Virus record (IMG/VR): IMGVR_UViG_3300032931_001151
Location: 62,001-126,000 of that record
Direction: 5' to 3' (one strand)
Length of the DNA stretch: 64,000 nucleotides
Shown: in pieces, positions 26,864 through 63,077 of the stretch
How the letters are laid out: each line of letters begins with the position of its first letter
How positions within the stretch are numbered: the stretch's first letter is position 1
Notes under the pieces: generated by a model
What the model saw: the letters and a program-made list of their open reading frames with translations, nothing else
Told to the model about the DNA's origin: nothing
Databases searched by the model: none
Translations under genes and position numbers: made by a program

Positions 26864-27799
26864 TTACGGTTGACCCGATGTTCCCGAAGTACCTGAAGTA
26901 CCCGGAGTGTTACACATACACTGTTGTAGTATCTTGGCTAATAATTCAACTGTAACTATATCACTTCCTTTAGCCATTTCATAACTTTCTGCAACTTTAT
27001 GTCCCATAACACTAGTTGAGGTTATCTTTGATATACCTCTTTCAAAATCATATAGTTCATTAATATCAATATTATTTTGAATATATCCTTGATATGGGAA
27101 TGTCATACCACCCAAAAACATCTTATTAATGAGTAAGAAATTCGTATTCACCGTTCTTGTTATTTTTATCTTTATAGACTGTGTATTTCTTGCCGTAACA
27201 AATGGTAAATGATATGTCAATATTTTAGGAACATTTTGTGGATTTGTATAATAATCAAAATTTTCCCACGGTCCTACTACTCCGAAATCAATAACATCTT
27301 GTTTTCCACCTAGAATCTGTATACCAATAGTTTCAGATATAGCATTAGATTCGCTATAAGTTGTCTCGGAGCAACCTGTTGCTTTTATAGAGAATATTAA
27401 CTCTTGATCTCTTAGTATTTCCGGTATATAAATCTCTCGCTCAATCCATTTTTCACGAGAATCCACCAAATTACTTTGGCCTTCATACACCAACATCTTA
27501 TTTACCGAGTCGTAACTTATTTCAGAGTCATTAGTTACAGCATTATCGGTTAAAGATGTCCAAACGTTACATTTTCTCAATGAATCAAATTGTCCACCGT
27601 TAAAGAGTATTCTTTTTCCACTTTCATTAAAATCAAATAGATTTCCATATAGTGCAGGTATTAATAACTTATTACCATTCAAAAAATTAAGAACATATTT
27701 AAAATTATTCTCTAACTCGGATAGTGGTAAATTTATGTTGTCATTATTGACTAAATCTGTTGGATTCACATAGTTTATGTTAGTTGTAAGATCAACCAT
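26864..27799 (-). CDS. putative fibre/baseplate protein with C-terminal (GTS)n tag
   Basis: N-terminal NLPLSELENNFKY fibre-attachment-like motif; ends PGTSGTSGTSGQP. Confidence 0.7.
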   Translation of the reverse strand: MVDLTTNINYVNPTDLVNNDNINLPLSELENNFKYVLNFLNGNKLLIPALYGNLFDFNESGKRILFNGGQFDSLRKCNVWTSLTDNAVTNDSEISYDSVNKMLVYEGQSNLVDSREKWIEREIYIPEILRDQELIFSIKATGCSETTYSESNAISETIGIQILGGKQDVIDFGVVGPWENFDYYTNPQNVPKILTYHLPFVTARNTQSIKIKITRTVNTNFLLINKMFLGGMTFPYQGYIQNNIDINELYDFERGISKITSTSVMGHKVAESYEMAKGSDIVTVELLAKILQQCMCNTPGTSGTSGTSGQP

Positions 27800-27814
27800 T
27801 TAATTCTTTCCCTT

Positions 27815-28648
27815 TTATATGAGATTCCACCAATCGACTCCGGTTTTTACTATAAAGTAATCAATATAGCAAGAGGCAGGATAACTAGTACCTATTTTAA
27901 CACAATTTGTACCTTTTTCTATATAATATGTATTTATATTTTCATTTGAAGAAATTACGACAGAATAATTATATTCTATATTTCCATTGCCATCTTTGAT
28001 AATATTTCCCTTGGAATCGGTTAATGGTTGGAATGCTGGAAGTGTTTGAATTCCATCATAGGTGCTATTGGGTTGAACGATATACTCATTTAAATACCAA
28101 CTACTACTTCCAAGTCCATTATAATGACTAGTATTTGATATATCTAACGTTTCTATTAATTTTCCGTTAGTATCATACATATTGGAAGCATTATTTGTTA
28201 TACTTCTTGTTCCTGCGAATATATTCCCAGATTTATTGAATCCGGTACTTGTTAATAATGTCTTATGGATAGCAAACCAAGTAATTTCGCTACCAAGAGA
28301 ATAACTACTATTAACTACTACTCTATTAGCATACTTTGTTGACCAAAATAATGTAGAATTGTCATTACTTCTAAAAAAGACATAATAATTTGTATCGGGG
28401 AATGATGTATCAAATCTAATTGTTGTGCTCTTTTTAGTTGATGCGATTTTTAGTACACCCGATTTGGTATATTTACTATCCACCGTTGTAGTTAATATCC
28501 AGTTAAATATATTTTCTGACCCATTCCAAGCACTATTAACGGTAAATGTACCATTGACATTTCTTTCGTACCAAGTATTAGCATTAAATCCGGCTTGGGT
28601 TAATACCCCACCCATTATTTTACTATTATCTATAATTTTAGAAGCCAT
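27815..28648 (-). CDS. structural protein built from about three copies of the shared beta-sandwich module
   Basis: TIRFDTSFPDTNYYVFF...WSTK...ITWFAI plus two diverged copies. Confidence 0.7.
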   Translation of the reverse strand: MASKIIDNSKIMGGVLTQAGFNANTWYERNVNGTFTVNSAWNGSENIFNWILTTTVDSKYTKSGVLKIASTKKSTTIRFDTSFPDTNYYVFFRSNDNSTLFWSTKYANRVVVNSSYSLGSEITWFAIHKTLLTSTGFNKSGNIFAGTRSITNNASNMYDTNGKLIETLDISNTSHYNGLGSSSWYLNEYIVQPNSTYDGIQTLPAFQPLTDSKGNIIKDGNGNIEYNYSVVISSNENINTYYIEKGTNCVKIGTSYPASCYIDYFIVKTGVDWWNLI

Positions 28649-28651
28649 TTT

Positions 28652-31600
28652 TTATTCTCCCGCCGAGGAATTTGATTCAACTAATAGCTGATTCATAGGT
28701 TGTACGCCTCTAATTTGCATAAAAGCGGGGGTGAAGAGTTTAACATTAGAAGTGATAAACTCCTCAACCATTGGTTCACGATTTCTATTGATCTTTGCAT
28801 CATCATAATAAATATCAAATTTATTACTCTTATAGAGTTTAGAATTTCCTAACATATATTGCTTATCAACTTGAGTAACATATGTTTTTCCATCATTCCT
28901 TGATACTATTAGTGCTTCCCCACCATTAAAGACCATAGTTCCATCGTATCTTAATCTATTTATATTTACTAATTTATTCATTCTCCAAGCCGCTATATGA
29001 TCATCAAATGGGTTCATATTGACTTGAGAATTGATATATTGCAAATCGCCATAATACATTAGCAATTTTTGCCCATTCCACCCATCAAGTTTTACCCATA
29101 GCGTCATAATATCTCTTTCACTATCATAAGAGTCTACTTTCCAAGATAATGGCTTTGTTCCACCCTCATAACTAAATGCAAAGTGGGGGTCGGCTATATC
29201 TATTTTATTAAACTCAAATATACTTCTTATTAGTTGAGAGTTATAAGTTGACGACACATTATAGGCGTTACCTTGAAGAACAATAGGAACAACTAACGAT
29301 TCGTTATTTTCCCAAGGAATATTATTAAATGTTATGGGTCTTCTAAATAAGAAGTTTTCAAATCCTCTATTGGAAACCGTATTATCGGATTCCGATCCTA
29401 ATTTTGCCCAATATACGTTTGAATATATTATAGACATTGCATTATTATACATTTGTGAATCGTCTAAATAATCTCTAACTTCCATATAATTTAATGACGA
29501 AGTAAATGAATTATCTTGATTGTATGTAACTACATAAGTATTTGTTGTATCAAAAGTATAAGACGAGTCTGTATATAATTTCTTCCCATTAACACATAGT
29601 TCAAAGTTTACAACATATCTCTTTCCACAATAATACCCATTTACTTGCTTTCTCGTAGTATTAAGAGTAACTACATTGGTGTAATTTGGAGAAATATTTA
29701 TATTACTTTGGGATATTATTACGGTTACTTGTTGAGCCTTATTATTAAAATAATTTAATATCCATTCTTGTTGATATGGATTATAAGCAACATCTAGAGC
29801 ATAGACTGAAGGGTTCCCATTACAATGTAATTTGACAATTCCCAAAGAAGAATCGACATATTGTTTAGATTGTGTTTCCAAACCTATTATGGTTTGTGGC
29901 ATTAATTCATCAACCACAACTTGAACCGTGTAATAATTTGCAATATAGTTTACTTCAGTTAAGTAGAAAATAGGAATTGAATACAAATCCGATATTATCG
30001 GTTGATTTGGACTACCCGAAGTTCCCGATGTGCCCGATGTACCAGATGATCCAGTTGTTGGACAATTTATAGAAAATATAAGTTGTTTTATTTCTGGATG
30101 TTCATCATAAATAAACACTCTATTGTCTTCAGTTATATCTTCTCTTATACAACCAAAAGCAACACTATAACCGTCATCACTTATATCTAATGATTCGCCA
30201 CTATACATTTGTGTAGTAGGAATTTTATTGAATTCAAAATATCTTCTAAAATATACATTAGAATTAAATTGCTTAACACTAAAACTACTCTTTGCGAATA
30301 TAATACTAGCATCTTGATTTGACTTGACGCTAATTCCAAAATTTCCATTAATGGCCGATTCTGGATCCGACACTATAATTTCTTGATACGGTATTTGTCC
30401 TATATTAAACCAATTCAAATTATTAAATATATGAACTAACCCGGCGCTATTCAATTCATTGGGACAACCGACTACTATAGTTGAGCCGTCTTTACTTAAA
30501 TCAATAGAGTATTTTGAAAATAACATACCCGCATATGAATTGCTTGGTATTAATTTTATCAATTTCAAAAGACTAGTAAAAATACAACGAGTATCAAATA
30601 TTGGTATATTATAAGCATAAACCGCACCACCATTTAAATAATTTTGGCTATCATTCTTAGCCGATACTATTATATTAGATGAGACATCATTAACTCTAAC
30701 TTGTTCTCCATATCTCTTTCCTTGTAATCCGTTTGCTAGACATTCCTTGTACGACATACCACCTATAGCCACATCGCTTGAATCGTATGGTATTAATCTA
30801 GCAATAAAATTCCAATTTGATCCACTAATAGTATCACCATAGATATAATCTCTACCAGAAATTGGGGTTGATGCTATATCTAAATCTTTTTGATCTATTA
30901 TGCCATCTTGATTCAAATCTAAAACTGGGTTCCACAATGGACTTGAAGAATTTGTTCCCAATGCGGCAGAAATATCAACTATACTTGCAGCGGTTAATGG
31001 GTTTGTAGTTACCATATAAACCGCACCATTATTACCAATATCAAATTCATCTAATAGAGCGCCGGTTGAATCATACTTTCTATAACTATAATACTCACTA
31101 GGAGATCCTATTAATAAGAAACTACCATCGTTAGAAGTTGATACTGAGCAACCAAATTCATAATTATTTACTATATTTCCAAAATAATCGGTTGAAGTTA
31201 AATATGATTGTTGTGAACTAGGCAATATATCATTAGTTTGTATAACTTGTTGATTATAAGAATGCCATTCATTATTTGTTGTATATGTTCTAACAACATA
31301 TCCGGTATAATTAAATTGCTTTCCAAATGGTATTATATTTCCAACATCTTTATTTGTTGCCACTGAAGATATTACTACAAATGATCCATCAAAATTAATA
31401 TCTATTTTTTCCTCGTCCGAAATTTCAAGAAATCTATTTAAATTAAATATATCATGCGACGAAGGTTTAATCTCGTTAATAAATCTCCATTGCGATCCAC
31501 ATCGTTTATATATAAGGACTCTTGAGGTGGGGACATTATATATTGGAACACCAATATTATTAGTGAATACGTAATTCTTTATAACTATAACGGCGGTATT

Positions 31601-33676
31601 GCCATCACCCGAAAGTTTTACTATTCTGCCGAAATCTATTGAATTTTTAAGAATACTATGTGTTGGGACTATTTCTTGTAAATTGGCGTAATAGTTTTCC
31701 GTATACTGATTGCCGGTAAGTGGAACGACTTCTACAAAAGGATTCACGTTTTCAATTTGAATTCCATCTTGTCTTATTTGTTGAGTAGTATATGATACTC
31801 TTTGTTCTGCTTGATACACCGGAGTAAATTCGGTGTATTTATCATATACCGAATCTAAAAGTATATGTTTATGTGGAGCATAATCATCATCAAAGGTATT
31901 AGTTCCAACTATATTTGTATCAATAGATGTTTGAATTGACGTTTCGTTTATATTAAATGCTACGGTGTATGACATATCATCAACTATATTAGTTGAGTCA
32001 AATGAAACCGACGAACTTCCTATTTTTATTTCTTTCTCATGCGGTGAGCCTAGTTGTAAATATTGTATTCCATCATTTAACGTTTTTATTTGCCTTGAAC
32101 TATTAAAATTTTCTTTATCTATTTTAGTTATATCGTCAAATACTAAATATGCTTCCCCTATTCCGTGATTTTCGACCGATAAAAGTTGTGTGCTTGAAGT
32201 TTTAGGAACAAACGTGGTTGTCAATTTAGGGGAATCATGTATAATATCTTTTTCCCAAAGATAATTTATATAACTCTTTTTATTGTCAATTTTACAGTCT
32301 TCTATTTCATATCCAACTATAGTAAACAAATCGTCTTGTAATATTACGGACGAAGCGAAAAAGTCTTGTTTTAATATGAAAACGCCAGAAGAATCTAATA
32401 CTGATATATTTTTCTTATTCAAATATCCAGCCAATATATTCTCAAATTCGGCATCATTGGAGAAACTCAAATCAACTTTTATAACTCCAAAATTCCAACT
32501 ATAACTAATATGATTATATTTTTGTTCATATTTTGGATCGTTGCTTATAGGAAGCAATTCATTAAAGAATATATAACAGTTAGAAATATCTTTTTTATTT
32601 GATGGGATTATACTTGTTATAAATTTGGTATGTAGGTATGGAACAAGTTGGTTATTAACTTCACCAAAATATTGAATATTCCCATTTAAACACTCGGTTA
32701 CACGAGCGAATGCATAATTTGCATTACTTGATATCGCTTGCGTCACGGTACTAAAATCGTAATCAATAAATTTATTAAGAGATACATCCTCATAATTTTT
32801 AACTATAAGATCGTGTATTTTGTTGGAATCGTCTATATAGAATATATTCGTATACCCATTTTTATCTACTATTTGTACAATTTCTTTATATGTTGCTTGT
32901 ATTGGTATTAATTCTTTCAAATCAACTTCCGAACTACTACCGAGACTTCCCAAATATACTTTGGAAATGTTTAGTCTTCCGCTATTTCTTTCAATATTAC
33001 TTATTACAAGATCGTTAATAGAATAGGTATAAGAATATCCTGTTATATCTATAATATTCTTATCTTCGTCACATTCTCTTTTTATCCATATTTTTAAATA
33101 CTCACCAGGCATTAAGTAGTCATTGTAAGCAATAGATGATTGCCAAGTTCTTCCAGATGCTACAACTAAATTTTGAAGTTCGTCAATACTATCAAGTTCA
33201 TTTGTTATAGTAAATGTATTTTTACTTGATTGTATATTATACTTTCCCTCATACCATATTGACAATTTAACACTATTTGTTAGATATGTTATGGCTTCGG
33301 GTATAGTCATTCCGACAGGAATATTAGTTGGAGTTGTAAAAGAAACGCTTGACGAAATATTATCTATATATTCCAAAAAATTAGAATTAGATATTCCCGA
33401 ATCCGCTTCACAACCAATATAGATACATCTATAAGTGGTAGCACCTTTAATGAAGTCAAAGTCTGTTACGCTATTGTAAAACCAATTTGACGACTGTTGT
33501 CCAGGAAGAACTTCTGAATTAGATATTAATTTTGAATCAACTTTATCAAAAGGGAATGATGTTAATGATTTTTCTTTTACTATTGCCCCACCCAATGATT
33601 GGCCAATCCAATACCCGCTAGTATTGATATTTACTGGATTGGTCGTATTACCTGATGATGGGCGATATATAATCAT
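28652..33676 (-). CDS. 1674-aa virion adhesin-like protein (FG-GAP propeller, dockerin-like EF-hand, DUF2341-like C-terminus)
   Basis: FGCSVSTSNDGSFLLIGSP, GAVY, DLSKDGSTIVVGCP; DLNQDGIIDQKDL; LSWKVDSYD...LWVKL...LMYYGD. Confidence 0.75.
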   Translation of the reverse strand: MIIYRPSSGNTTNPVNINTSGYWIGQSLGGAIVKEKSLTSFPFDKVDSKLISNSEVLPGQQSSNWFYNSVTDFDFIKGATTYRCIYIGCEADSGISNSNFLEYIDNISSSVSFTTPTNIPVGMTIPEAITYLTNSVKLSIWYEGKYNIQSSKNTFTITNELDSIDELQNLVVASGRTWQSSIAYNDYLMPGEYLKIWIKRECDEDKNIIDITGYSYTYSINDLVISNIERNSGRLNISKVYLGSLGSSSEVDLKELIPIQATYKEIVQIVDKNGYTNIFYIDDSNKIHDLIVKNYEDVSLNKFIDYDFSTVTQAISSNANYAFARVTECLNGNIQYFGEVNNQLVPYLHTKFITSIIPSNKKDISNCYIFFNELLPISNDPKYEQKYNHISYSWNFGVIKVDLSFSNDAEFENILAGYLNKKNISVLDSSGVFILKQDFFASSVILQDDLFTIVGYEIEDCKIDNKKSYINYLWEKDIIHDSPKLTTTFVPKTSSTQLLSVENHGIGEAYLVFDDITKIDKENFNSSRQIKTLNDGIQYLQLGSPHEKEIKIGSSSVSFDSTNIVDDMSYTVAFNINETSIQTSIDTNIVGTNTFDDDYAPHKHILLDSVYDKYTEFTPVYQAEQRVSYTTQQIRQDGIQIENVNPFVEVVPLTGNQYTENYYANLQEIVPTHSILKNSIDFGRIVKLSGDGNTAVIVIKNYVFTNNIGVPIYNVPTSRVLIYKRCGSQWRFINEIKPSSHDIFNLNRFLEISDEEKIDINFDGSFVVISSVATNKDVGNIIPFGKQFNYTGYVVRTYTTNNEWHSYNQQVIQTNDILPSSQQSYLTSTDYFGNIVNNYEFGCSVSTSNDGSFLLIGSPSEYYSYRKYDSTGALLDEFDIGNNGAVYMVTTNPLTAASIVDISAALGTNSSSPLWNPVLDLNQDGIIDQKDLDIASTPISGRDYIYGDTISGSNWNFIARLIPYDSSDVAIGGMSYKECLANGLQGKRYGEQVRVNDVSSNIIVSAKNDSQNYLNGGAVYAYNIPIFDTRCIFTSLLKLIKLIPSNSYAGMLFSKYSIDLSKDGSTIVVGCPNELNSAGLVHIFNNLNWFNIGQIPYQEIIVSDPESAINGNFGISVKSNQDASIIFAKSSFSVKQFNSNVYFRRYFEFNKIPTTQMYSGESLDISDDGYSVAFGCIREDITEDNRVFIYDEHPEIKQLIFSINCPTTGSSGTSGTSGTSGSPNQPIISDLYSIPIFYLTEVNYIANYYTVQVVVDELMPQTIIGLETQSKQYVDSSLGIVKLHCNGNPSVYALDVAYNPYQQEWILNYFNNKAQQVTVIISQSNINISPNYTNVVTLNTTRKQVNGYYCGKRYVVNFELCVNGKKLYTDSSYTFDTTNTYVVTYNQDNSFTSSLNYMEVRDYLDDSQMYNNAMSIIYSNVYWAKLGSESDNTVSNRGFENFLFRRPITFNNIPWENNESLVVPIVLQGNAYNVSSTYNSQLIRSIFEFNKIDIADPHFAFSYEGGTKPLSWKVDSYDSERDIMTLWVKLDGWNGQKLLMYYGDLQYINSQVNMNPFDDHIAAWRMNKLVNINRLRYDGTMVFNGGEALIVSRNDGKTYVTQVDKQYMLGNSKLYKSNKFDIYYDDAKINRNREPMVEEFITSNVKLFTPAFMQIRGVQPMNQLLVESNSSAGE

Positions 33677-33686
33677 TCATTGACCT

Positions 33687-46088: not shown

Positions 46089-46622
46089 TCACCAAAGATT
46101 TACATTATTCTCTTTAAGCCAATCAATCCAATTTGACCTCTCAACCGATGAGACTCCTTTAATATAAACGGCAAGCCTTTCACTATCACTTAGCTCTTTT
46201 GGTTGGAATCCCATTTTTAATCCGGCTTGATCGGGTGTACGGTTGCTCTTTTTTGTGTTGCAATTTTTACAAGTCGCAACTATATTAAAACTTTTATTGG
46301 GTCCATTTTGACCTAATGGAATTATATGATCTCTATTTCCATTTTTAATAGTTAATTTACATCCACAATAGCAGCAAGTATATGAATCTCTAGCAAGAAT
46401 GTATCGGAGAGATGTAGAAGCATTTCTTCTTCTTTTTGAAACATCTTTGTATTTCTTTAGAACAATGATACTAGGAACTTTCCAAGTACAAAATTGTGAT
46501 CTCATTACTTTATCGTAAGCATGAACAATTTCAGCTTTTCCTTCAAGATACATTACAAGAGCATCAAAGCTATTTATTATGTTAATATAGGTGTAGTCGG
46601 CATTAAGTACGAGCGAACGCAT
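46089..46622 (-). CDS. HNH endonuclease (McrA/HNH_5-like)
   Basis: LVLNADY, RDSYTCCYCG, DHIIP, NIVATCKNCNTKKSNRTP. Confidence 0.9.
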   Translation of the reverse strand: MRSLVLNADYTYINIINSFDALVMYLEGKAEIVHAYDKVMRSQFCTWKVPSIIVLKKYKDVSKRRRNASTSLRYILARDSYTCCYCGCKLTIKNGNRDHIIPLGQNGPNKSFNIVATCKNCNTKKSNRTPDQAGLKMGFQPKELSDSERLAVYIKGVSSVERSNWIDWLKENNVNLW

Positions 46623-52065: not shown

Positions 52066-52066
52066 T

Positions 52067-54012: not shown

Positions 54013-54038
54013 AATATTTCCTATTATGCTATTATACC

Positions 54039-54278
54039 TCAAATTATATGGATTTCAACACCCATTTCAGTTAATTCAAGAATATCTTCGGTAAAGTATT
54101 TCGACTCTATTACTAATGTATCGGTTTCAAATATATAATCATCAAGATCATCACCCGATACTTCTTCAAAATCTTTCCCATATACATCCGACATAAACAA
54201 TAATATCTTTTTTGTTTTAGATTCATTTTCTTCAAATATAGCAAATGAAGTTTCTTCTAAATCGGAAAAGTAAAGCAT
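54039..54278 (-). CDS. acidic hypothetical protein
   Basis: AGGAG RBS. Confidence 0.7.
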   Translation of the reverse strand: MLYFSDLEETSFAIFEENESKTKKILLFMSDVYGKDFEEVSGDDLDDYIFETDTLVIESKYFTEDILELTEMGVEIHII

Positions 54279-54287
54279 TGTAATCTC

Positions 54288-54716
54288 CTAGTAAAAGAAA
54301 TGTAAATGGTTGTTATTGCTATTTATTATAGAAATGCCATTATAATGAAATTTATTATCTCTCATTTCTTTTATAAGCTCTTTATACTTACTACTTTTTA
54401 TTACTTTTCCTATTACATCATATCTATATTCACTCTCGGGGGTCTTTTTAATAGTTTCTTCAATCTCCTTAAAGTTGCTATTGATTTGTCTCCAAGAATT
54501 AATTAACGTATTTATTTCTACGATGTGTTCAATTATGCAACAAAATTCCCATAATCTGGCCTTAGAATCTATTGTTCCATTTTTAGTATATTCTTGTATA
54601 TCTTTTTTGTCTTCATCTAAAAGATATTTATTTTCAATAAAGATGTTTCTAAATGATGAAATAAACCTAACCATCTTTAGAATGGTTTGAATATCTATTA
54701 GGAGTGGTTCAGGCAT
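54288..54716 (-). CDS. hypothetical protein
   Basis: Overlapping operon packing. Confidence 0.7.
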   Translation of the reverse strand: MPEPLLIDIQTILKMVRFISSFRNIFIENKYLLDEDKKDIQEYTKNGTIDSKARLWEFCCIIEHIVEINTLINSWRQINSNFKEIEETIKKTPESEYRYDVIGKVIKSSKYKELIKEMRDNKFHYNGISIINSNNNHLHFFY

Positions 54717-54945
54717 TTTGAAGAACTTCTATCAAATAATCTATTTGAGATGAAATAAGAGTTTTTGAATATTTTCCATTTTCAAATTTATAATCAACTA
54801 TAAAAAACTTATTAAATACATTGTAAACCATATTACAATTATAATATTCAAGTACGGTTAAATTTGGATGTATTCTACTTCTTTTTCCTTTTTCAAGAGT
54901 AATATATTCTTCTTGAATCGGGATTGTGTTAATCATTATTTGCAT
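54709..54945 (-). CDS. hypothetical protein
   Basis: Operon packing. Confidence 0.6.
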   Translation of the reverse strand: MQIMINTIPIQEEYITLEKGKRSRIHPNLTVLEYYNCNMVYNVFNKFFIVDYKFENGKYSKTLISSQIDYLIEVLQNA

Positions 54946-54947
54946 AA

Positions 54948-55226
54948 TTATGCCTTTTGTATAAGTTCTTCAACCTTTTCTTTCGGAATATTAACTTTAA
55001 AAGCAAATCTAATATCTTCAATATGTCTTAAATCAAGTACAACGTCCACCGAATGAATATCAACTTCTCCTATTCTTTTTTTAGCTTCATTCGTTATCTT
55101 AACTCTTAAGTAGTGTAAAGTATCAGCACTAAAGAATTTAGACTCTTTAGAGTATTCGGAGAGAACTTCGTCAATTATCTCTCCTAATATTTTTTGCTTT
55201 TCTGGTTCTAGTTTAAATTCTTCCAT
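54948..55226 (-). CDS. hypothetical protein
   Basis: AAGGA RBS. Confidence 0.7.
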   Translation of the reverse strand: MEEFKLEPEKQKILGEIIDEVLSEYSKESKFFSADTLHYLRVKITNEAKKRIGEVDIHSVDVVLDLRHIEDIRFAFKVNIPKEKVEELIQKA

Positions 55227-55238
55227 ATATCCTTTCTA

Positions 55239-56579
55239 TTATTTCACGGGGAGCGGTGGAACCGCATTATCTAATCCTTCTTCCTCTGGAGTTGCTTCTG
55301 GAGTTTCTGGTGTTGCTTCAGGAGTTGCTTCGGTAGGAGTTTCCGATGTTGCTTCGGGTGTTGCTTCAGGTGACTCCCCTTTAGTCGGCGTCGTTTCGGC
55401 GGCAACTTCCTCTGGCTTGGACTCTTCTTGATCTTTTATATCACCTTCGCCTAAGTTCTGAGAATTAAATATAACATATACTTGACCCATAGAACCCGAT
55501 TCTTGATTATATACACTCGTTAACGTTCTAAAAATATTACTTCTAACGAATATAGGATCTTCTTTATTTGATTTTATAAACTCGTGTACTAATGACGGAA
55601 CCATTACGTTAACTTTATCGAGTGGAATCTTATAGTTCTCACCTTCTTCAGTAACCATTGCCCCTATATCAATCAAATTTGCTCTAATAGCTGGAGCATT
55701 TGAGAAGTTTATTTTGATAGTTCTCAAAAAGTTTATAGCCTTTGATTTATCTTGCCAATTCTTTCCGAAATTCGTTTCAAGGTATGCATTTATTTTATCA
55801 TATGCTTGGCGTTTCATATCGGTTGAAAGTTCATTGTTAGCATTATATATTGGAACATTGGAATTATGAATTATTATGTTCTTCTCTCTCTTATCCATTA
55901 AAGGGTATGTTTTTCTTAATTCTCTATTTTTATCTCTTAACATATCTCTTTGAGAAGGAGTAAGTAAATTCATAACATCTTTAGAAGAGATTCCAGATTT
56001 TAAATCGTCTTCTGGTATAAGTTTCTTCAAATCAAGTCCGACATTGACATATTTAAATTTTTCTAATCTAATATTGTTTTCATTGGTTAAGCTATAATCA
56101 ACATCTACGTCTCCACTATCAGCGAACATCTTTGTTACTTTTTGCTCAGGGGTTTCTTGCGGTTCAACTGGAGATTCGGGGGTAATTTCAGGCTCTACTG
56201 GAGCATCTTCCGTTGGTAGTTCTTTCGTATCATCTTTAGTTTCTTTAGGTGGTGGAGTTTCATCTTTACTTATCTCAGCGTCTATCATATCATCTAAAGA
56301 TTCTTCCCCTTCTGCCTCAATTATTCCAAATTGAGTTTCGCCTGGCTCTTTGGCTACACATATTGGACCCGCATAACCACCGCCTCCACCTTCCGATTGA
56401 CTTAATGACGATTGACCGGTTCCATATAATTTTGGACCAGCGCCGAATAATACACCCTCGGCAATTATGGCCTTCACTTTATTTCTAACTGGTGGTTCTA
56501 TCACGACTTGAGTCTTAACCGGCTCCAATTTGATAGGTTTAGGTGACTCATAAAATAATGATTTAATTTTGTTCGACAT
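55239..56579 (-). CDS. acidic Pro/Glu/Thr-rich late protein (prohead core/internal-protein candidate)
   Basis: Late-promoter motif upstream; PEAT repeats at about 55283-55372. Confidence 0.65.
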   Translation of the reverse strand: MSNKIKSLFYESPKPIKLEPVKTQVVIEPPVRNKVKAIIAEGVLFGAGPKLYGTGQSSLSQSEGGGGGYAGPICVAKEPGETQFGIIEAEGEESLDDMIDAEISKDETPPPKETKDDTKELPTEDAPVEPEITPESPVEPQETPEQKVTKMFADSGDVDVDYSLTNENNIRLEKFKYVNVGLDLKKLIPEDDLKSGISSKDVMNLLTPSQRDMLRDKNRELRKTYPLMDKREKNIIIHNSNVPIYNANNELSTDMKRQAYDKINAYLETNFGKNWQDKSKAINFLRTIKINFSNAPAIRANLIDIGAMVTEEGENYKIPLDKVNVMVPSLVHEFIKSNKEDPIFVRSNIFRTLTSVYNQESGSMGQVYVIFNSQNLGEGDIKDQEESKPEEVAAETTPTKGESPEATPEATSETPTEATPEATPETPEATPEEEGLDNAVPPLPVK

Positions 56580-56618
56580 GGTTAAAAGTACCTTTTTGTA
56601 TTATAGCCTCTTTTAACT

Positions 56619-56626
56619 TATTTATA
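56619..56626 (-). promoter_or_regulatory. T4-type late promoter TATAAATA
   Basis: Exact octamer on minus strand in the gap between dUTPase and the 446-aa gene. Confidence 0.55.
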
Positions 56627-56632
56627 TAATAT

Positions 56633-57082
56633 TTATTGACCAGACGACCCGAATCCTTTAGTCCCTCTAGAATCATTGGTTGGCATAGCATCAAGTTGTT
56701 TCAATGTAACTTGAGGTACTCTTTTAAAGATCATTTGGGCTATTTTTGATCCTTTTGGTAGGTTTACTACTTCCTTACTAGTATTCAATAGAATAACCTT
56801 AATATTATTATGGTAAGTGTAATCTATAGTTCCAGGAGTATTTACTATAGTTAACCCCAATTTTAGAGCATTTCCGCTCCTTGGGCGAATTTGAGCTTCC
56901 CAAATATCATTTGAAGTGGTCATGTCAACTACGACCCCCGTATCTACTAACTTTCGTTCTCCTGGATTAATAGATACTTCCTCAACGGAGGACAAATCCC
57001 ATCCCGCATCCGTAGGATTGGCCTTGGATGGCATTTTAGCATCCAAATGATTTAAATAGACTCCGAAAGTAATATCTTCCAT
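56633..57082 (-). CDS. dut: trimeric dUTPase
   Basis: AGWDL, RPRSG, NTPGTID..Y, KIAQM, RGTKGFGSSG. Confidence 0.96.
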   Translation of the reverse strand: MEDITFGVYLNHLDAKMPSKANPTDAGWDLSSVEEVSINPGERKLVDTGVVVDMTTSNDIWEAQIRPRSGNALKLGLTIVNTPGTIDYTYHNNIKVILLNTSKEVVNLPKGSKIAQMIFKRVPQVTLKQLDAMPTNDSRGTKGFGSSGQ

Positions 57083-57107
57083 AATTATTTCCTTAATTGG
57101 GTTTTCT

Positions 57108-57168
57108 AATTATAGCATAAAAATAAATCCAAAATATAAAAAATTTGTACTAGCTCTATGCTATAATT
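57108..57168. promoter_or_regulatory. divergent extended -10 promoters (TATGCTATAATT on both strands)
   Basis: Perfect 12-bp inverted repeat 57108-57119 / 57157-57168 between dut and the GT25 genes. Confidence 0.7.
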
Positions 57169-57194
57169 GCTACATCTTAATATAGGAAAATAAT

Positions 57195-58109
57195 ATGATA
57201 AAGGCAAAATTCTATCTAATAAATCTTGAAAAAGATACCGCTAAATTAGAGTGGTGTAAAAAAGTAATTGGCGATAGATTTGAATTTGAAGTATTTAAGG
57301 CTATTGAAGTGGGAGAAAAAGAAGATATAAAAAACTTTAAAACTAAGGGAGAATATGGGTGCTTCCAAAGTCATATGAAAGTAATGGAAAAGTGTCTAAA
57401 AGAAAAAGATAGTTATGATTTATTTTTCATCATGGAAGATGATATATTATTTGTAGAGAATTTTGATAAGTATTTCAACGATGTTGTGGATAAACTTGTT
57501 AAAACCGACTACGATGTATGTTTGTTTTATGATTGGTCTAAAACCGACGATTTAACAGAAGATATAATTTCACTTAAAAAAACCGATTCGTTATATTTAC
57601 ATTTTTATGCTATACATCCTAATAAAATAGGAAAAATGCTTTGGTATGGTAATACATATTGGTGCCCATTAGATTATATTATAAAGCATGAAAGTAGTCA
57701 AGGAAATATAAACGCAATAACAACATCTAAAATTCTTGTTAAACAAAATAGATTTTTTGATTCTGCATTAACTGGATATGGATTTAGAGGAGAGCTAAAC
57801 GGCGTTCTTGATTGTGTATATCCGTATGATGACATGTATTCTAAAGAATGTGAATTAATTGGAAAATGGAAACTTTACAAGACTAATTTTAGAGATATAT
57901 TAGAATTTTTTATTGACGGATCCGTTACTTGCGAACAATCAAAACTTACGGGTGGGAGATGGAGAATGATACACAACGAGGTAATAATAACATTTTTACA
58001 ACCCGAAGTATTTGAAATAATCTATTTAAAAAATAATAAAGTATATAGTAAAATGCCGGGAGAAAGTTGGGATACTATGAAAACTTTTATTATAAAAGAG
58101 GGAAAATGA
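57195..58109 (+). CDS. GT25-like glycosyltransferase + C-terminal beta domain
   Basis: YLINLEKD, FKAI, GCFQSH, IMEDD, HFYAI; LIGKW...GGRWR. Confidence 0.85.
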   Translation: MIKAKFYLINLEKDTAKLEWCKKVIGDRFEFEVFKAIEVGEKEDIKNFKTKGEYGCFQSHMKVMEKCLKEKDSYDLFFIMEDDILFVENFDKYFNDVVDKLVKTDYDVCLFYDWSKTDDLTEDIISLKKTDSLYLHFYAIHPNKIGKMLWYGNTYWCPLDYIIKHESSQGNINAITTSKILVKQNRFFDSALTGYGFRGELNGVLDCVYPYDDMYSKECELIGKWKLYKTNFRDILEFFIDGSVTCEQSKLTGGRWRMIHNEVIITFLQPEVFEIIYLKNNKVYSKMPGESWDTMKTFIIKEGK

Positions 58110-59884
58110 GAATTAAATTCTATCTAATAAATCTTGAAAAAGATATATCTAAACTTAATTGGTGCAAAAAAATAATAGGAAATATGTTTGAATTTGAAGT
58201 ATTTAAAGCAATTGTACCCAAAAGTAGAGGAGAATTCCCATCCATAGGGATTCGTGGTTGTTTTGAGAGCCATTTAGCATTATATAAAGAAATTGATAAA
58301 ATTAAAAATGATATAGATGTTGCTATTATAATGGAAGACGATATATGTTTTTCTAGTGAATTTGAATTAAATTTTAAATCTCTAGTTGATCGATTGCTAT
58401 ATAAAGAATATGACATATGTCATTTTTATGATGTACACCAAAAAGATATTGACTGGCCTATTACATTTAGAGAAAGTAATACCCACAATACTCATTTTTA
58501 TGCCATAAACCCAAAAAGTGCTCTAAAAATATTCAATAAAATAAAAGATTATGACGTTGATATTGATCATGTGTTGCATACTAAAAGTAAATTAAAAGAA
58601 ATAAATACACTGTCAACAACTAAAACCATAGTTAAACAGAATAGATATTTTATGTCTAGTGTTACTGCCCAAGGTTTTAGAACCGATATACAATATAGTT
58701 ATGATTTTATATATCCATATGATGATCTTTTCAAAGATGAATGTCCTTTAATTGGAAAATGGCATTTCTCAAAAATAAATTATAAAGAAGAATGGATTTT
58801 TAATGAAAACGGATCTATAATTTGTAAAAATACAGGTGGAAGATGGAGAATAATTAACGGAGTTCTTTCAATTACATTTGATGACCCAAGATATTGGGAA
58901 ACGTTTCCAATTAAAGATGGAAAATCATATACAGCAATGAAAGGATCTAGTTGGGATAATAGAGACATCTATTTAATTAAAGACTCTTCTACGTACAAAG
59001 AAAGTGGAGTAAAATTCTTTTTAATAAATCTTGAAAAAGATAAAGAAAAATTAAAATGGTGTAAAAAAATAATAGGAGATAGATTTGAATATGAAGTATT
59101 TAATGGGATTGTGCCGGAGGACAAAGGTGAATTCCCAACTATAGGAATGAGAGGATGTCACGAAAGTCATACTAAAATATGGGAAATGGCAAAAAATATG
59201 ACAGATTGTAGTTTAGTCATAATAATGGAAGATGATATAGTGCTATCCAATAGTTTTGATTCTAAATTTAAAATGGCTTTGGCGGCAATGAAGCAACAAG
59301 ATTTTGAAATAGGGCTATTTTACGATTGCTTCCGTGAAGAATTTACGGAAGAAAATATATTCTTAGTTGAAAGTTCTTCGTATAATTTACATTTTTATGC
59401 AATTAAACCTCACACCGTAGAAAAATGCCTAGATTTAGTAAAAGGGTCTTGTTGCGATATAGATCACACTTTACATATGGGTTCTATAGATAAAAAAATA
59501 AGAATGGTATCAACTTCACGAAATCTTGTTGCTCAAAATAGATATTTTGATTCTAATGTAACAAAAACGGGATATAGAGAGGAAAATAGAAGCTTTCCTT
59601 TTATATACCCATATGATGACATATATTCAAAAAAATGCCCATTAATAGGAAAATGGTATTTTAGAAAAATTAATTTTAGAGATACGTTTGAATTTAAAGA
59701 GAATGGGACCGTAAAATGTATGGCACCCGGAGGAAGATGGAGAAAAGTTGGAAATGAAATCGTTATAACTTTTGAAAATAGTCAATGGAAAGAATACATA
59801 TATTTGCTAGAAGGAAATACTTACACCGTAATGCAAGGGGTAAGTTGGGATAAAAACAATATTATTGTAACTAAATTAAATTAG
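58106..59884 (+). CDS. tandem double GT25-like glycosyltransferase
   Basis: Two full copies of the same unit; start MRIKFY at 58106 (ATGA overlap, GAGGG RBS). Confidence 0.85.
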   Translation: MRIKFYLINLEKDISKLNWCKKIIGNMFEFEVFKAIVPKSRGEFPSIGIRGCFESHLALYKEIDKIKNDIDVAIIMEDDICFSSEFELNFKSLVDRLLYKEYDICHFYDVHQKDIDWPITFRESNTHNTHFYAINPKSALKIFNKIKDYDVDIDHVLHTKSKLKEINTLSTTKTIVKQNRYFMSSVTAQGFRTDIQYSYDFIYPYDDLFKDECPLIGKWHFSKINYKEEWIFNENGSIICKNTGGRWRIINGVLSITFDDPRYWETFPIKDGKSYTAMKGSSWDNRDIYLIKDSSTYKESGVKFFLINLEKDKEKLKWCKKIIGDRFEYEVFNGIVPEDKGEFPTIGMRGCHESHTKIWEMAKNMTDCSLVIIMEDDIVLSNSFDSKFKMALAAMKQQDFEIGLFYDCFREEFTEENIFLVESSSYNLHFYAIKPHTVEKCLDLVKGSCCDIDHTLHMGSIDKKIRMVSTSRNLVAQNRYFDSNVTKTGYREENRSFPFIYPYDDIYSKKCPLIGKWYFRKINFRDTFEFKENGTVKCMAPGGRWRKVGNEIVITFENSQWKEYIYLLEGNTYTVMQGVSWDKNNIIVTKLN

Positions 59885-62019
59885 TCACAATCTATCGGAA
59901 TCCAAGAGGGTAAATCTACATCCGGAGCAATTATAACATTATAATCGGTTTGGATTAGTTTACTTGCAACGCAACTATTAGTTGGACTCCAATCAATATC
60001 TTCTAATTTATCAACTGCCGGAATTGGCCCTTCCATTGAAACTTCCCAAGCACCCACTCCATTATTAGTAGTTGGATTCCATGTTGATGTATACCACCAA
60101 TTCTTGTATGAATATACTATAGTATTTGCCGAAACGCTTAAACCGGTTAATGTACTTCTAGTATTAGATACGAACATCATCATATTATAATAATCATCGT
60201 AAGAAGAGCTACTAGACGAAACACAACAGTCTGTATCTGGTGGTGGATCCGTATTAACATCATAGTAATCGTCAAATGTTTCGTATATATCGGTGCCGGT
60301 AGGAATATAAACTACTAATTTATATTGTATAGCGGGACCTTCACCGCAAGGATAATCTTCCCAACTTCCATATATTGTTCCGTATGGAGTATCTTGAGAA
60401 AAATCATATGATCCTAATACGACTGCCGTCCCAGTACTAACATCGTCTATACTAATATCCCAATCTGGTAGATCCCAACAATTCACATAAAAGTAAACAT
60501 CATACGTGTCATATAATATAGAAGGACCCGTGCTACTAGAAGATGAACTAGAAGAAGAAGAAGAAGATGAACTAGAAGAAGATGAACTTGAGGATGAGCT
60601 AGAAGATGAACAACAATTGGTTCCACCATTTAATACTATAATTTTACCTTTATTTTCCGTATTTATACTTGCACATCCTTGAACATTTATACTTTTAAAT
60701 AAAAAGGTATATGATGGCCTTCCATAACTTTCATATTTTTTATCTTTACCATAATAAACCGATGCGGTATTAGTAGTTAAAGTTCTATTATTCCCATAAA
60801 CTAATGATTCATTTATAAATAACCCGTTATTTTTAAAATAGTTCATTAAATTTGAGTTACTACTTGTGGCTGGACACACACTTACTACGGTCATCCCCGA
60901 ACTTGATAAAGAACTAGCATCAATACTATCCAAAATCTTATCAACATCACTACAAGAAGCACAATCATATATTGGAGTGCTTAATTCTATATAACACCCA
61001 TTTTGGTTTATATTCACTGAAGGATAGCCTCGATATAAAGCTCTATTCAAGAAGCTATCCGATGGAGTTGAAATATCAACTATTAATCCACTATTATTAG
61101 TTACTTCCGAGTATACCGTATTTGATATATCAATATCACCAACACAATTAATATTTAGTTGACTCGTCGAACAATTATTAGTACATGCCGGAGTCAATTT
61201 TCCAGTAGTAGTATATGAATCTATATAATAATCATTATTAACCGAATTATTAACCGTTCTATTGATATTGCTAATTCCTTTAAAAAACCATATAGATCCA
61301 AATTGCCAAGTATATCTTTCCGGAATTACTTCAAGTATACTTTTGTTTGAATGTATTTCTGATTCTTTATCCGCCCACTTTTTAGTCCCTAAGCCAACCC
61401 CGTTTCCGGTAGTTAACGAATAAAAGTTTCCATTATACCAAGTATCAATTTCTTTAACGGCACTTACAAAATTAGCCCCTTTACCACATGATGTTATTGT
61501 GAAACATGGTTCGGACACAACGATATTTGGAGAGCAATTTTGTTCAACGGAAATAGAGTTATTAGTAATTGAAGGGCTAATTCCCGCATTAGGAAAGCTA
61601 CATTGTGGTATTTCTTGCCCTTGTATATTAGCAAAGAAGAATATTTTTTCACAATTTGATTGATTGGAAGTACTTCCAAATATAGAATCACTTGGATCGT
61701 ATACCGTTGGACTAGCATATAAAAATTGAGGATCGGGATTTCCGGGAGAACCTAGAAATATAGGAGCATATATATTTGAATTTATTGTTTTAAAACAAGT
61801 CCCAGGTAAATTTGTATTACTTATATACGATAATGATTCTTTTATTTTCTTAAGATTATTAACTGGAGGCATAGCATTGGCAAAAACTAACTCATTTTGT
61901 GGCAATATATCATTTGTTCTATACGGTGTTTGTGTACTAGCATCTAACAAACTACTATTTTTATTAGTAGTCGTCGTATTTAGAGATGTTAATCGCTTTT
62001 TATTTCCGTATAATGACAT
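59881..62019 (-). CDS. Cys/Ser-rich putative virion protein with poly-Ser linker
   Basis: 26 consecutive Ser codons at 60532-60609; follows gp3-like gene. Confidence 0.7.
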   Translation of the reverse strand: MSLYGNKKRLTSLNTTTTNKNSSLLDASTQTPYRTNDILPQNELVFANAMPPVNNLKKIKESLSYISNTNLPGTCFKTINSNIYAPIFLGSPGNPDPQFLYASPTVYDPSDSIFGSTSNQSNCEKIFFFANIQGQEIPQCSFPNAGISPSITNNSISVEQNCSPNIVVSEPCFTITSCGKGANFVSAVKEIDTWYNGNFYSLTTGNGVGLGTKKWADKESEIHSNKSILEVIPERYTWQFGSIWFFKGISNINRTVNNSVNNDYYIDSYTTTGKLTPACTNNCSTSQLNINCVGDIDISNTVYSEVTNNSGLIVDISTPSDSFLNRALYRGYPSVNINQNGCYIELSTPIYDCASCSDVDKILDSIDASSLSSSGMTVVSVCPATSSNSNLMNYFKNNGLFINESLVYGNNRTLTTNTASVYYGKDKKYESYGRPSYTFLFKSINVQGCASINTENKGKIIVLNGGTNCCSSSSSSSSSSSSSSSSSSSSSSSSSSTGPSILYDTYDVYFYVNCWDLPDWDISIDDVSTGTAVVLGSYDFSQDTPYGTIYGSWEDYPCGEGPAIQYKLVVYIPTGTDIYETFDDYYDVNTDPPPDTDCCVSSSSSSYDDYYNMMMFVSNTRSTLTGLSVSANTIVYSYKNWWYTSTWNPTTNNGVGAWEVSMEGPIPAVDKLEDIDWSPTNSCVASKLIQTDYNVIIAPDVDLPSWIPIDCD

Positions 62020-62021
62020 TT

Positions 62022-62681
62022 TTAAACCTTTTTAATAACATATCTATCGGATGGAACTATACCGGAATGCACCCATGTAATTGGTAATATAATCTTATCC
62101 GGTTCACTTTCTTTTAGTTGAATTTGGCCTATTGATGCGGGATGTAAATCTTTTATTTCCATTTCAAATACTTTTTCTTGGTGATTATTCAATATAAGTA
62201 ATGTGCCATTTACATAGAATCTCTTATAATACTCATATTCTTGAAACTTCATATGTTCTTCGGGATTATGTGCCGCCAATAACCAAAAATACATTAATCT
62301 ATATACAAACCAATCTTCATCATTCATTACATTCATTGTTAAATCGCCAAACTCCAATTTACCCATAACATGCTTTACCGTAGCCATTTGAGTTTGCATA
62401 GATGCATACCCCACGTTCATTTCTGGCAAGTCTACATTTTGTACAAATAATAAAAAGTTTTTAAGGTCAGTATTTCGTTCTACGAAAACTTCTTGTCTTA
62501 TTTTCTCTAACTCTATATTATTCTTTCCAAATTGCAATTGTAAGTTTAATAAATATTCATCTGTAAATTTAGAAAGAAGATAACTAGTTGGAATGGAATC
62601 TAATATGAATATATACTTATTAGTATGAGATTCATTAATGAGTAACTCTGAATTAAATACTATTTGATCACAAATGGCCAT
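62022..62681 (-). CDS. tail-tube-fold protein, T4 gp3-like tail completion protein
   Basis: FVQNVDLP, KLEFGDLTMNVMNDED..VY..MYFWL, GTLLILNN, LHPASIG.IQL. Confidence 0.78.
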   Translation of the reverse strand: MAICDQIVFNSELLINESHTNKYIFILDSIPTSYLLSKFTDEYLLNLQLQFGKNNIELEKIRQEVFVERNTDLKNFLLFVQNVDLPEMNVGYASMQTQMATVKHVMGKLEFGDLTMNVMNDEDWFVYRLMYFWLLAAHNPEEHMKFQEYEYYKRFYVNGTLLILNNHQEKVFEMEIKDLHPASIGQIQLKESEPDKIILPITWVHSGIVPSDRYVIKKV

Positions 62682-62690
62682 AAAATATCC

Positions 62691-63077
62691 TTAATAAAGA
62701 TCCATTAGTCTAAAATAAGTAACTTTTACATCACTCATAGTAGTTGAAGGTGCTCCAGAAGTACCAGAAGTGCCGGATGTCCCCGATGTTCCGGGGGTTA
62801 AGGTGGTTGTAAGTCTAACTATAACTCGATATACGCCTTTAATCCACGATTCATCAGTTTGGAGTCTATATGAGTACCATCCAGGTCTTGAATATATTTG
62901 ATCCATTTGCGTGGAAACTAATAAGTTATCTTCAGTGTCATGAATCTCTATGGTAGCTCCGTCTGCCCAACGATAATCATTGGACTCGGGGGGAATAGAT
63001 TGGTCAACATATGGCTTATTACTCACTTCAATGGTAACACTCTGTCCAATTCGTATTGCGATATCTTTTGCGTACAT
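62691..63077 (-). CDS. small Ig-like virion protein with (GTS)4 loop
   Basis: GWYSY..W.KGVYRV..; PGTSGTSGTSGTSGAP. Confidence 0.65.
   Translation of the reverse strand: MYAKDIAIRIGQSVTIEVSNKPYVDQSIPPESNDYRWADGATIEIHDTEDNLLVSTQMDQIYSRPGWYSYRLQTDESWIKGVYRVIVRLTTTLTPGTSGTSGTSGTSGAPSTTMSDVKVTYFRLMDLY

What the first reader, a model, noticed from the sequence alone, without database searches (positions are those of the whole stretch)
26871..62795. The same (GTS)3-4 tag is grafted onto three unrelated virion proteins
Seen: TPGTSGTSGTSGQP (about 26871-26908), TTGSSGTSGTSGTSGSP (about 30012-30058) and TPGTSGTSGTSGTSGAP (about 62752-62795). All start with T(P/T)G and end with G-x-P. Codons vary between units (e.g. 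gga aca tcg ggg aca tcc ggc act tct ggt act tct), so this is not simple DNA slippage. One copy is a free C-terminus, which argues against a mere linker. Inference: a portable recognition or modification tag.
Basis: partly seen in the sequence, partly recalled or inferred. Interest (0 to 1): 0.62.

Follow-up and report, generated by a model that had tools for sequence, protein, structure and literature searches.

The report
Portable Gly-Thr-Ser loop in phage tail proteins
Three unrelated tail and baseplate proteins of an uncultured 214-kb phage carry the same short Gly-Thr-Ser stretch, which is real, conserved and movable, but most likely an exposed flexible spacer akin to known 'phage collagen' repeats; a modification tag is not shown.

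Summary
Exactly three (G[TS]S)n tracts exist in the 214,200-bp genome. All lie in the window, on the minus strand, in tail/baseplate genes that are unrelated once the tags are masked. Chance expectation is about 1e-5.

The tags are kept in orthologues. Silent sites are saturated (pS 0.56-0.81) but replacement change is low (pN 0.03-0.20). Selection therefore acts on the peptide, not the DNA.

They sit at module boundaries or loop tips:
- Tag A lies between a CBM-like body and an exchangeable C-terminal module. That module has been split off here as a separate 156-aa gene, so the 'free C-terminus' is a fission scar.
- Tag B lies in an old interdomain linker, next to a roughly 660-aa insert.
- Tag C lies in the last hairpin loop of a 128-aa Ig-like protein.

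In distant relatives the tag is missing from some of these sites. It appears instead in other loops and in a fourth tail protein.

GTS triplets are the common unit of collagen-like arrays in environmental phage fibre proteins.

Best reading: an exposed hydrophilic spacer or hinge, a miniature of phage collagen. O-glycosylation remains open, because the phage carries a large glycan-synthesis island, but it is untested. Novelty is modest.

The parts
26867..26908 (-). Tag A: TPGTSGTSGTSGQP, the last 14 residues of P0001; preceded by C-M-C-N
   Evidence: pLDDT is below 50 in the AF2 model. Conserved in 29-30 of 40 homologues.
26864..27799 (-). P0001, 311 aa: long N-terminal helix, CBM-like jelly-roll body, C-terminal helix, then tag A. 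Fibre- or adhesin-like tail protein.
   Evidence: AF2 pLDDT 79. Foldseek matches to CBM4/22/61 and Cry domain III-type sandwiches, E 1e-6 to 1e-4. No Pfam or PHROG hit.
26840..26866 (-). Junction between P0001 and P0005: TAA TAA, a third in-frame stop, and an AAGGA ribosome-binding site before the ATG
   Evidence: Nearly identical in relative L128, so this is a real two-gene arrangement.
26369..26839 (-). P0005, 156 aa: the split-off C-terminal module. Its last 31 residues (CFCLGPPGA...YPNIFNF) match the tail that follows the tag in single-gene relatives.
   Evidence: 55% identity, E 3e-7 to P0072.
30008..30058 (-). Tag B: TTGSSGTSGTSGTSGSP, residues 1207-1223 of P0002; preceded by N-C-P
   Evidence: Kept in the 61-70% identity orthologues, shortened in P0103, absent at 40% identity.
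28652..33676 (-). P0002, 1674 aa: baseplate or fibre protein downstream of the gp6-like and PKD-bearing genes
29861..31843 (-). Roughly 660-aa insert of P0002 (residues about 612-1272, weak FG-GAP signal) that orthologues of about 1000 aa lack. Tag B lies near its C-terminal edge, where short orthologues have a GTS- or T/S/P-rich linker.
62748..62798 (-). Tag C: TPGTSGTSGTSGTSGAP, residues 94-110 of P0003, in the loop between the last two beta strands
   Evidence: strands 81-93 and 112-125; pLDDT of the loop below 50 to 55.
62691..63077 (-). P0003, 128 aa: Ig/macroglobulin-like beta sandwich encoded in the tail operon
   Evidence: AF2 pLDDT 77.7. VIA-align Z 10.6, rmsd 2.5, 92 residues aligned to MG domains; phage baseplate chains at Z 7.6-8.2. 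Neighbouring genes.
62022..62681 (-). Tube-like 219-aa protein (gp3/tube paralogue). It has no tag here, but its homologue in relative G003 carries TPATSGTSGTSSTPD in an inserted loop.

Best explanation
The tags are a lineage-wide, short, Gly-X-Y-phased low-complexity module with the form T-[TP]-(G-[TS]-S)n-G-x-P. It is inserted in solvent-exposed loops and at domain junctions of tail and baseplate proteins of an uncultured T4-like jumbo myovirus clade. I take it to work as an unstructured or extended hydrophilic spacer or hinge, a miniature of the GTS-type collagen-like repeats common in environmental phage fibre proteins. It separates and tethers independently folding modules and tolerates insertion, exchange or fission of the module next to it.

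Shown:
- The tags are non-random.
- They lie at module boundaries or a loop tip.
- They are predicted to be disordered.
- Their length is highly variable.
- They are gained and lost at different sites and in at least four protein families.
- Selection acts on the peptide, not the DNA.

Inferred:
- The physical role, meaning flexibility, reach and solubility.
- That the repeated identical sequence comes from copying of an existing idiom rather than from recognition by an enzyme.
For: - Tag A sits exactly where the conserved body (residues 1-297) ends and variable C-terminal architectures begin. These are nothing (this phage, split gene), a 40-aa tail, or a roughly 150-aa domain plus tail.
- Tag B sits where short orthologues have a GTS- or T/S/P-rich linker joining the two conserved halves, next to a roughly 660-aa insert.
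- Tag C is the low-confidence loop of the last hairpin of an Ig-like sandwich. Homologues of 115-121 aa have a short tagless hairpin there.
- In the P0003 family the loop-bearing segment spans 22 to 88 residues.
- The tag moves. It occurs in a jelly-roll loop of a P0001 homologue and in the tube-like protein of other relatives. In short P0002 orthologues it lies at residues about 100-140, 310-330 and 578-605.
Most are long strict Gly-X-Y arrays in ORFs of 500-3800 aa. Nine of ten sampled carriers hit tail-category PHROGs: tail fibre, collagen-like minor tail, baseplate hub.
- Gly-X-Y repeats rich in Pro, Ser and Thr are described in cyanomyovirus tail-fibre candidates (PMC1079782).
Against: - A pure spacer should tolerate more replacement than is seen. 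pN in the tags (0.03-0.20) is no higher than in the folded parts (0.08-0.23), while silent sites are saturated.
- The core [ST][ST]G[ST][ST]G and the closing [ST]-G-x-P are as conserved as fold-core residues: 52 and 50 of 56 in the P0003 family.
- Other low-complexity linkers in the same genome (poly-Ser, ATPE, ASPASP) are not shared between proteins. Composition alone therefore does not explain why this one sequence recurs.
- No structure or experiment shows the tags are disordered in the assembled virion.
Confidence: 0.5

Rival explanations
1. The tag is an acceptor for a post-translational modification, most plausibly O-glycosylation of its Ser/Thr by the phage's own glycosyltransferases. 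Several tail proteins would then be decorated through one portable sequon.
For: - The Ser/Thr stretch is exposed and under purifying selection, with a conserved TSG...SGxP core.
- The same sequence was acquired independently by at least four tail-protein families.
- The genome carries a roughly 13-kb glycan island, outside the window at genome 188.9-201.8 kb. It encodes GDP-mannose dehydratase, a fucose-synthase-like epimerase, a DegT aminotransferase, a NodZ-like fucosyltransferase, two GT2, two GT7C-like, a GT21-like and an AsnB-like protein. There is also a 614-aa double-GT2 protein conserved in two relatives.
- Glycans at the C-termini of mycobacteriophage capsid and tail-tube subunits are a precedent (Freeman 2023, as cited in PMC12619734).
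Against: - No modification was or could be observed here.
- Phage glycan islands more often act on host surface polysaccharide or on DNA.
- The island is 60-135 kb away from the tagged genes.
- Two of five relatives whose P0003-family gene or its neighbour carries a tag show no GT2 hit, although they are only 62-76% complete.
- No known bacterial O-glycosylation sequon matches G-T-S (own knowledge).
Confidence: 0.25
2. The tags are short structural elements. They would be either collagen-like triple helices stapling homotrimers, helped by flanking Cys knots, or polyproline/polyglycine-II segments that pack, as in the glycine-rich motifs of T-even gp38.
For: - All three tags are in perfect Gly-X-Y phase, with 4-5 triplets closed by G-x-P.
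- One P0003 homologue has 13 uninterrupted triplets and a precomputed Pfam Collagen hit.
- 350-aa P0001 homologues have 5-8 in-phase Gly positions bracketed by C-x-C on both sides.
- P0001 has a long N-terminal helix typical of trimeric fibres.
- Long GTS arrays elsewhere are annotated as collagen-like tail proteins.
- gp38 glycine-rich motifs form a conserved core between variable segments (PMC3157838).
Against: - Four to five triplets with almost no imino acid or charge would be far too unstable alone (own knowledge of triple-helix propensities).
- 19 of 56 P0003 homologues break the Gly phase, for example with GTSGTSG[VI] 8-mers and GTPSTSG.
- Tag C is a hairpin loop with both ends on one domain, which cannot enter a parallel triple helix.
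- The Pfam Collagen model finds nothing in this genome.
- AF2 gives the tags pLDDT below 50.
Confidence: 0.15
3. The function is at the DNA level. The tags would be recombination or slippage hot spots, either conserved microhomology used to swap modules or a contingency repeat.
For: The tags coincide with module junctions, a gene fission and a large insertion. Exchanges in T-even adhesin genes occur in or near conserved motifs (PMC3157838). Tag length varies among close relatives.
Against: - Silent sites in the tags are saturated between relatives (pS 0.56-0.81).
- Codons differ between units and between the three tags, so there is no DNA identity for homologous exchange or slippage.
- Tandem Repeats Finder scores only tag B, at 81% matches.
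Confidence: 0.05

Closest known systems
'Bacteriophage collagen': Gly-X-Y repeats in phage tail-fibre proteins (Smith et al. 1998; Gly-X-Y with Pro/Ser/Thr in cyanomyovirus P-SSM2 ORFs, PMC1079782; PHROG 'collagen like minor tail')
   Same: Same triplet phase and same favoured triplets (GTS, GSS). Found in tail proteins. IMG/VR holds many phage ORFs built of long GTSGTSGSSG... arrays.
   Different: Here there are only 4-5 triplets. There is no Pfam Collagen hit. The phase is often broken in homologues. One copy lies in a hairpin loop and one at a protein end, so a triple helix is unlikely.
Glycine-rich motifs (GRMs) of T-even gp38 adhesins
   Same: Short conserved Gly-rich motifs that delimit exchangeable or variable segments in a host-recognition protein (PMC3157838).
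   Different: GRMs are a fixed set inside one domain of one protein family and form its structural core. The GTS tag is one motif scattered over at least four unrelated proteins, and it is predicted to be disordered.
Natural and engineered Gly/Ser/Thr interdomain linkers
   Same: Same composition, position between domains, variable length and low predicted order.
   Different: Sequence conservation is as strong as in folded parts. The same ordered motif with a closing G-x-P recurs in unrelated proteins.
Glycosylated C-terminal extensions of mycobacteriophage capsid and tail-tube subunits (Freeman et al. 2023, via PMC12619734)
   Same: Exposed Ser/Thr-bearing appendage on virion proteins of a phage that encodes glycosyltransferases.
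   Different: No modification is shown here. The phage type, the host and the positions (loops and junctions, not only C-termini) all differ.

Membership tests
Collagen-like triple-helix repeat (Pfam PF01391 / phage collagen) | Long uninterrupted Gly-X-Y run recognised by the family model | tested here: not met
   There are 4-5 triplets per tag. PF01391 finds nothing in the genome even at E<=1. Only one homologue (P0010, 13 triplets) carries a precomputed hit.
Collagen-like triple-helix repeat (Pfam PF01391 / phage collagen) | Gly phase strictly kept across orthologues | tested here: inconclusive
   The phase is kept in 37 of 56 P0003 homologues and in 31 of 34 tag-bearing P0001 homologues. 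Triplet-unit duplication would give the same result.
Collagen-like triple-helix repeat (Pfam PF01391 / phage collagen) | Three parallel chains (trimeric carrier) | not testable with these tools
   The oligomeric state is unknown. Tag C is a hairpin loop in the monomer model.
Flexible interdomain linker | Lies between independently folding modules and is predicted to be disordered | tested here: met
   Tags A and B lie at module junctions defined by orthologue architectures. Tags A and C have pLDDT below 50-55. Tag C is a loop, not a junction.
Flexible interdomain linker | Relaxed sequence constraint compared with the folded domains | tested here: not met
   pN is 0.03-0.20 in the tags and 0.08-0.23 in the rest of the proteins, with saturated pS.
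Post-translational modification sequon (virion O-glycosylation) | Exposed acceptor residues and a candidate transferase in the same genome | tested here: met
   The Ser/Thr loop is exposed. The glycan island holds at least six glycosyltransferase-like genes. This shows co-presence only; no link is shown.
Post-translational modification sequon (virion O-glycosylation) | Observed covalent modification of the tag | not testable with these tools
   This needs mass spectrometry of virions.
gp38-type glycine-rich motif / recombination linker | DNA-level conservation that allows homologous exchange at the motif | tested here: not met
   Silent sites are saturated, and third-position identity between tags is 1-5 of 10.
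Simple-sequence contingency repeat | Near-identical tandem DNA units | tested here: not met
   Units differ at most third positions. Tandem Repeats Finder detects only tag B, at 81% matches.

The most novel reading that the evidence does not exclude
The T-[TP]-(GTS)n-G-x-P module is a portable sequon. The phage's own fucose and amino-sugar glycan island would recognise it and O-glycosylate several tail and baseplate proteins. That would be a virus-encoded 'glyco-tagging' system on the host-contacting end of an aquatic jumbo myovirus.
Probability: 0.2. Interest if true: 0.75.

Novelty: new variant of a known kind. Interest (0 to 1): 0.42.

Why it matters
If the tag is only a spacer, the finding still has two uses. 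It is a clean example of how tail proteins of large uncultured phages are rebuilt around a reusable linker by module insertion, module exchange and gene fission. It is also a handy marker for domain boundaries in proteins that otherwise have no annotation. If the tag is instead a modification sequon, it would extend virion glycosylation from mycobacteriophages to aquatic T4-like jumbo phages. It would also tie a phage 'auxiliary' glycan island to a defined set of acceptor sites, and that link is directly testable by mass spectrometry.

Tried and rejected
- Nucleotide and protein searches of the INPHARED phage collection with the tagged region, P0116 and P0003 found nothing. Only the tube-like protein gave distant cyanophage gp3 hits, at 25% identity.
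- PHROGs and Pfam gave no significant family for P0001, P0002 or P0003.
- Read-through of the P0001 stop was rejected. There are three in-frame stops, a conserved ribosome-binding site and an ATG, and the same split occurs in a relative at 85% identity. The long intact ORFs give no sign of an alternative genetic code.
- Prolyl-4-hydroxylase-type oxygenase (PF13640) and Collagen (PF01391) have no hit in the genome.
- Complex prediction of P0001 with P0005 gave no verdict. It is not evidence either way.
- The look-up of sequencing runs listed no run.
- The Freeman 2023 paper is not held.
- A full-text search for the peptide string found only Plasmodium MSP1 block-2 repeats and engineered linkers, and nothing on phages.
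- The test of co-occurrence between tags and GT2 genes in five relatives was uninformative, because the records are fragments.
- The large representative protein search was not needed and was not run.
Full report
**Setting**

The window is bases 62,001-126,000 of a single 214,200-bp contig with 32.8% G+C. IMG/VR lists the record as a virus record, about 90% complete.

The genome encodes the following structural proteins:
- a portal, a major head protein and a large terminase;
- a 648-aa sheath and a 218-aa tube;
- a baseplate hub and a tape-measure-like protein;
- a gp5-like hub/lysozyme, a gp25-like protein and a gp6-like wedge protein.

It is a distant T4-like jumbo myovirus. Its nearest named relatives are marine cyanomyoviruses at only about 25% identity. 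The standard genetic code gives long intact ORFs, so no other code was invoked.

**Observation**

The three tracts exist as described, all on the minus strand:
- Tag A is at 26867-26908, the last 14 residues of the 311-aa P0001.
- Tag B is at 30008-30058, residues 1207-1223 of the 1674-aa P0002.
- Tag C is at 62748-62798, residues 94-110 of the 128-aa P0003.

A six-frame search of the whole genome for two or more G[TS][TS] units finds only these three. Composition predicts about 1e-5 such runs, and 200 shuffles gave none.

With the tags masked, the carriers share nothing. All three lie in the two tail/baseplate blocks, which make up 22% of the proteome, so the chance of that is about 0.011. 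Codons differ between units and between tags. Each tag is in perfect Gly-X-Y phase, with 4-5 triplets closed by G-x-P.

**What the carriers are**

P0001 models with pLDDT 79. It has a long N-terminal helix, a jelly-roll body and a short helix, followed by a disordered tag. The body resembles carbohydrate-binding modules at Foldseek E 1e-6 to 1e-4.

P0003 models with pLDDT 77.7 as a seven-strand Ig/macroglobulin-like sandwich. VIA-align gives Z 10.6, rmsd 2.5 Å and 92 aligned residues, with phage baseplate chains at Z 7.6-8.2. Its tag is the low-confidence loop between the last two strands. It is encoded between a PHROG 'tail protein' gene and a tube-like gene.

P0002 follows the gp6-like gene and a PKD-bearing 1911-aa gene.

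That these are virion proteins is therefore well supported by context. It is not proven.

**Tag A is a fission scar, not a designed free end**

Forty homologues of P0001 were found. Their architectures after the tag differ:
- Those at 74-85% identity mostly end within 0-1 residues of the tag.
- Those at 62-65% identity continue for about 40 residues into a tail of the form C-x-C-x-G-P-P...Y-P-N-I-F-N-Y.
- Many at 43-49% identity continue through a roughly 150-aa domain to the same tail.

In this phage, the next ORF is P0005 (156 aa). It starts 24 nt after the stop and ends in that same tail, with 55% identity over 31 residues (E 3e-7). The stops, ribosome-binding site and start codon are conserved in an 85%-identity relative that has the same 311 + 156 aa arrangement. 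A 64%-identity relative has one 350-aa gene and no 156-aa ORF.

The tag therefore marks the boundary between a conserved body and an exchangeable C-terminal module, and the gene has split there.

**Tag B lies in an old linker**

Orthologues of about 1000-1060 aa align to P0002 residues 1 to about 600 and about 1272 to 1671. P0002 and its near relatives therefore carry a roughly 660-aa insert with a weak FG-GAP signal.

Between the two conserved halves, the short orthologues have a GTS-rich or T/S/P-rich linker. Tag B is kept in the three closest long orthologues, shortened in a fourth, and absent at 40% identity. Short orthologues carry GTS tags at other places, around residues 100-140 and 310-330.

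**Tag C is an insertion into a hairpin**

All 56 homologues found by the word-based protein search carry a G/T/S-rich stretch at this spot. The segment spans 22 to 88 residues. The core [ST][ST]G[ST][ST]G is present in 52 and a closing [ST]-G-x-P in 50.

More distant homologues of 115-121 aa in IMG/VR have a short, tagless hairpin instead. In one such genome the tag sits in an inserted loop of the neighbouring tube-like protein. In another it sits in a loop of the jelly-roll of a P0001 homologue.

The element is thus portable, in the sense that it is gained and lost at different exposed sites in at least four tail-protein families.

**Level of selection**

I compared the window with relatives by the Nei-Gojobori method. 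The tags show saturated silent change (pS 0.56-0.81) but little replacement (pN 0.03-0.20). Replacement in the rest of the same proteins is no lower (0.08-0.23).

This excludes recent slippage and any role that needs DNA identity. It also shows that the peptide itself is under constraint, more than a composition-only linker would predict.

**Wider context**

Most are long, strict Gly-X-Y arrays in large ORFs, with up to 99 separate regex runs of three or more GTS-type triplets per ORF. Nine of ten sampled carriers hit tail-category PHROGs, including 'collagen like minor tail'. Among those with short tags are baseplate-hub proteins.

Gly-X-Y repeats rich in Pro, Ser and Thr in cyanomyovirus tail-fibre candidates are in the literature (PMC1079782). 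This genome has no long array.

**Interpretation**

The best-supported reading is an exposed, flexible, hydrophilic spacer or hinge, a miniature of phage collagen, placed where modules meet or where a loop projects. Its neighbourhood is prone to insertion, exchange and fission. I give this reading a probability of 0.5.

Its weakness is the strength and specificity of conservation. That keeps a modification-sequon reading alive at 0.25. The genome holds a roughly 13-kb glycan island with sugar-nucleotide enzymes and at least six glycosyltransferase-like genes. Virion glycosylation is also known in mycobacteriophages (cited in PMC12619734). No link between the island and the tags is shown, however.

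A true collagen-like or polyglycine-II structural role gets 0.15. It fits the phase and the flanking Cys pairs in some homologues. It is hard to reconcile with the short length, the frequent phase breaks (19 of 56) and the hairpin position of tag C.

A DNA-level role gets 0.05 and is contradicted by the silent-site data.

**Verdict**

This is a new variant of a known kind of phage low-complexity element, of moderate interest.

**Working notes**

The window contains no broken toxin gene; the Cry-type and iota-toxin structure hits are fold-level matches of a beta-sandwich only.

Noticed in passing
window 26369-27799 (-): Gene fission. P0001 (311 aa) and P0005 (156 aa) correspond to one gene in relatives. 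The split falls directly after tag A and is conserved in an 85%-identity relative.
   Followed up: yes
window 29861-31843 (-): A roughly 660-aa insert with a weak FG-GAP signal in P0002. Orthologues of about 1000 aa lack it.
   Followed up: partly
window 59881-62019 (-), repeat DNA at 60535-60611: The 712-aa Cys- and Asn-rich protein P0116 has a 29-residue poly-Ser run preceded by Cys-Cys, and a second CC-V-SSSSSS. The gene, and the two plus-strand ORFs at 57195-59884, are absent from relative L158, so this is a variable island.
   Followed up: partly
window 55239-56579 (-), repeat DNA at 55285-55372: The 446-aa acidic protein P0115 ends in (E/P)-A-T-P-E repeats. It has no family hit.
   Followed up: no
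genome 188,895-201,789 (outside the window; locus L160): A glycan-synthesis island flanked by phage replication genes. It encodes GDP-mannose 4,6-dehydratase, a fucose-synthase-like epimerase, a DegT aminotransferase, a NodZ-like fucosyltransferase, two GT2, two GT7C-like, a GT21-like and an AsnB-like amidotransferase. A 614-aa double-GT2 ORF at genome 160,709-162,553 has counterparts of 609 and 631 aa in two relatives.
   Followed up: partly
the three tags (window 26867-26908, 30008-30058, 62748-62798): The Ser codon TCG is used 6 times out of 13 in the tags, against 10.9% genome-wide (binomial p 0.0015). AGY is almost unused. No explanation was found.
   Followed up: partly
L150:1276-2037 (+) and L151:447-2159 (-): In distant relatives the tag occurs in the tube-like protein (an inserted loop near residue 76) and in a jelly-roll loop of a 571-aa P0001 homologue. 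Their P0003 homologues have no tag.
   Followed up: yes
window 16773-26360 (-): A 3195-aa ORF directly downstream of P0005 with no PHROG hit. Counterparts of 2805-3112+ aa occur in relatives. It is presumably a giant fibre or baseplate protein.
   Followed up: no
window 46089-46622 (-); genome 142,081-143,889 (-); L159:2022-3218: Mobile elements lie inside the structural modules. There is an HNH endonuclease next to the baseplate genes and a 602-aa homing endonuclease next to the major head gene. In a relative, an IS605 OrfB/TnpB gene sits after the tube-like gene.
   Followed up: no
P0001 residues 294-296; P0002 residue 1205; homologues in alignments A1 and A2: Cys residues often lie just before the tag (C-M-C-N-TPG, N-C-P-TTG, V-C-TTG). 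In 350-aa P0001 homologues and some P0003 homologues they bracket it on both sides, which suggests disulfides closing or knotting the segment.
   Followed up: partly
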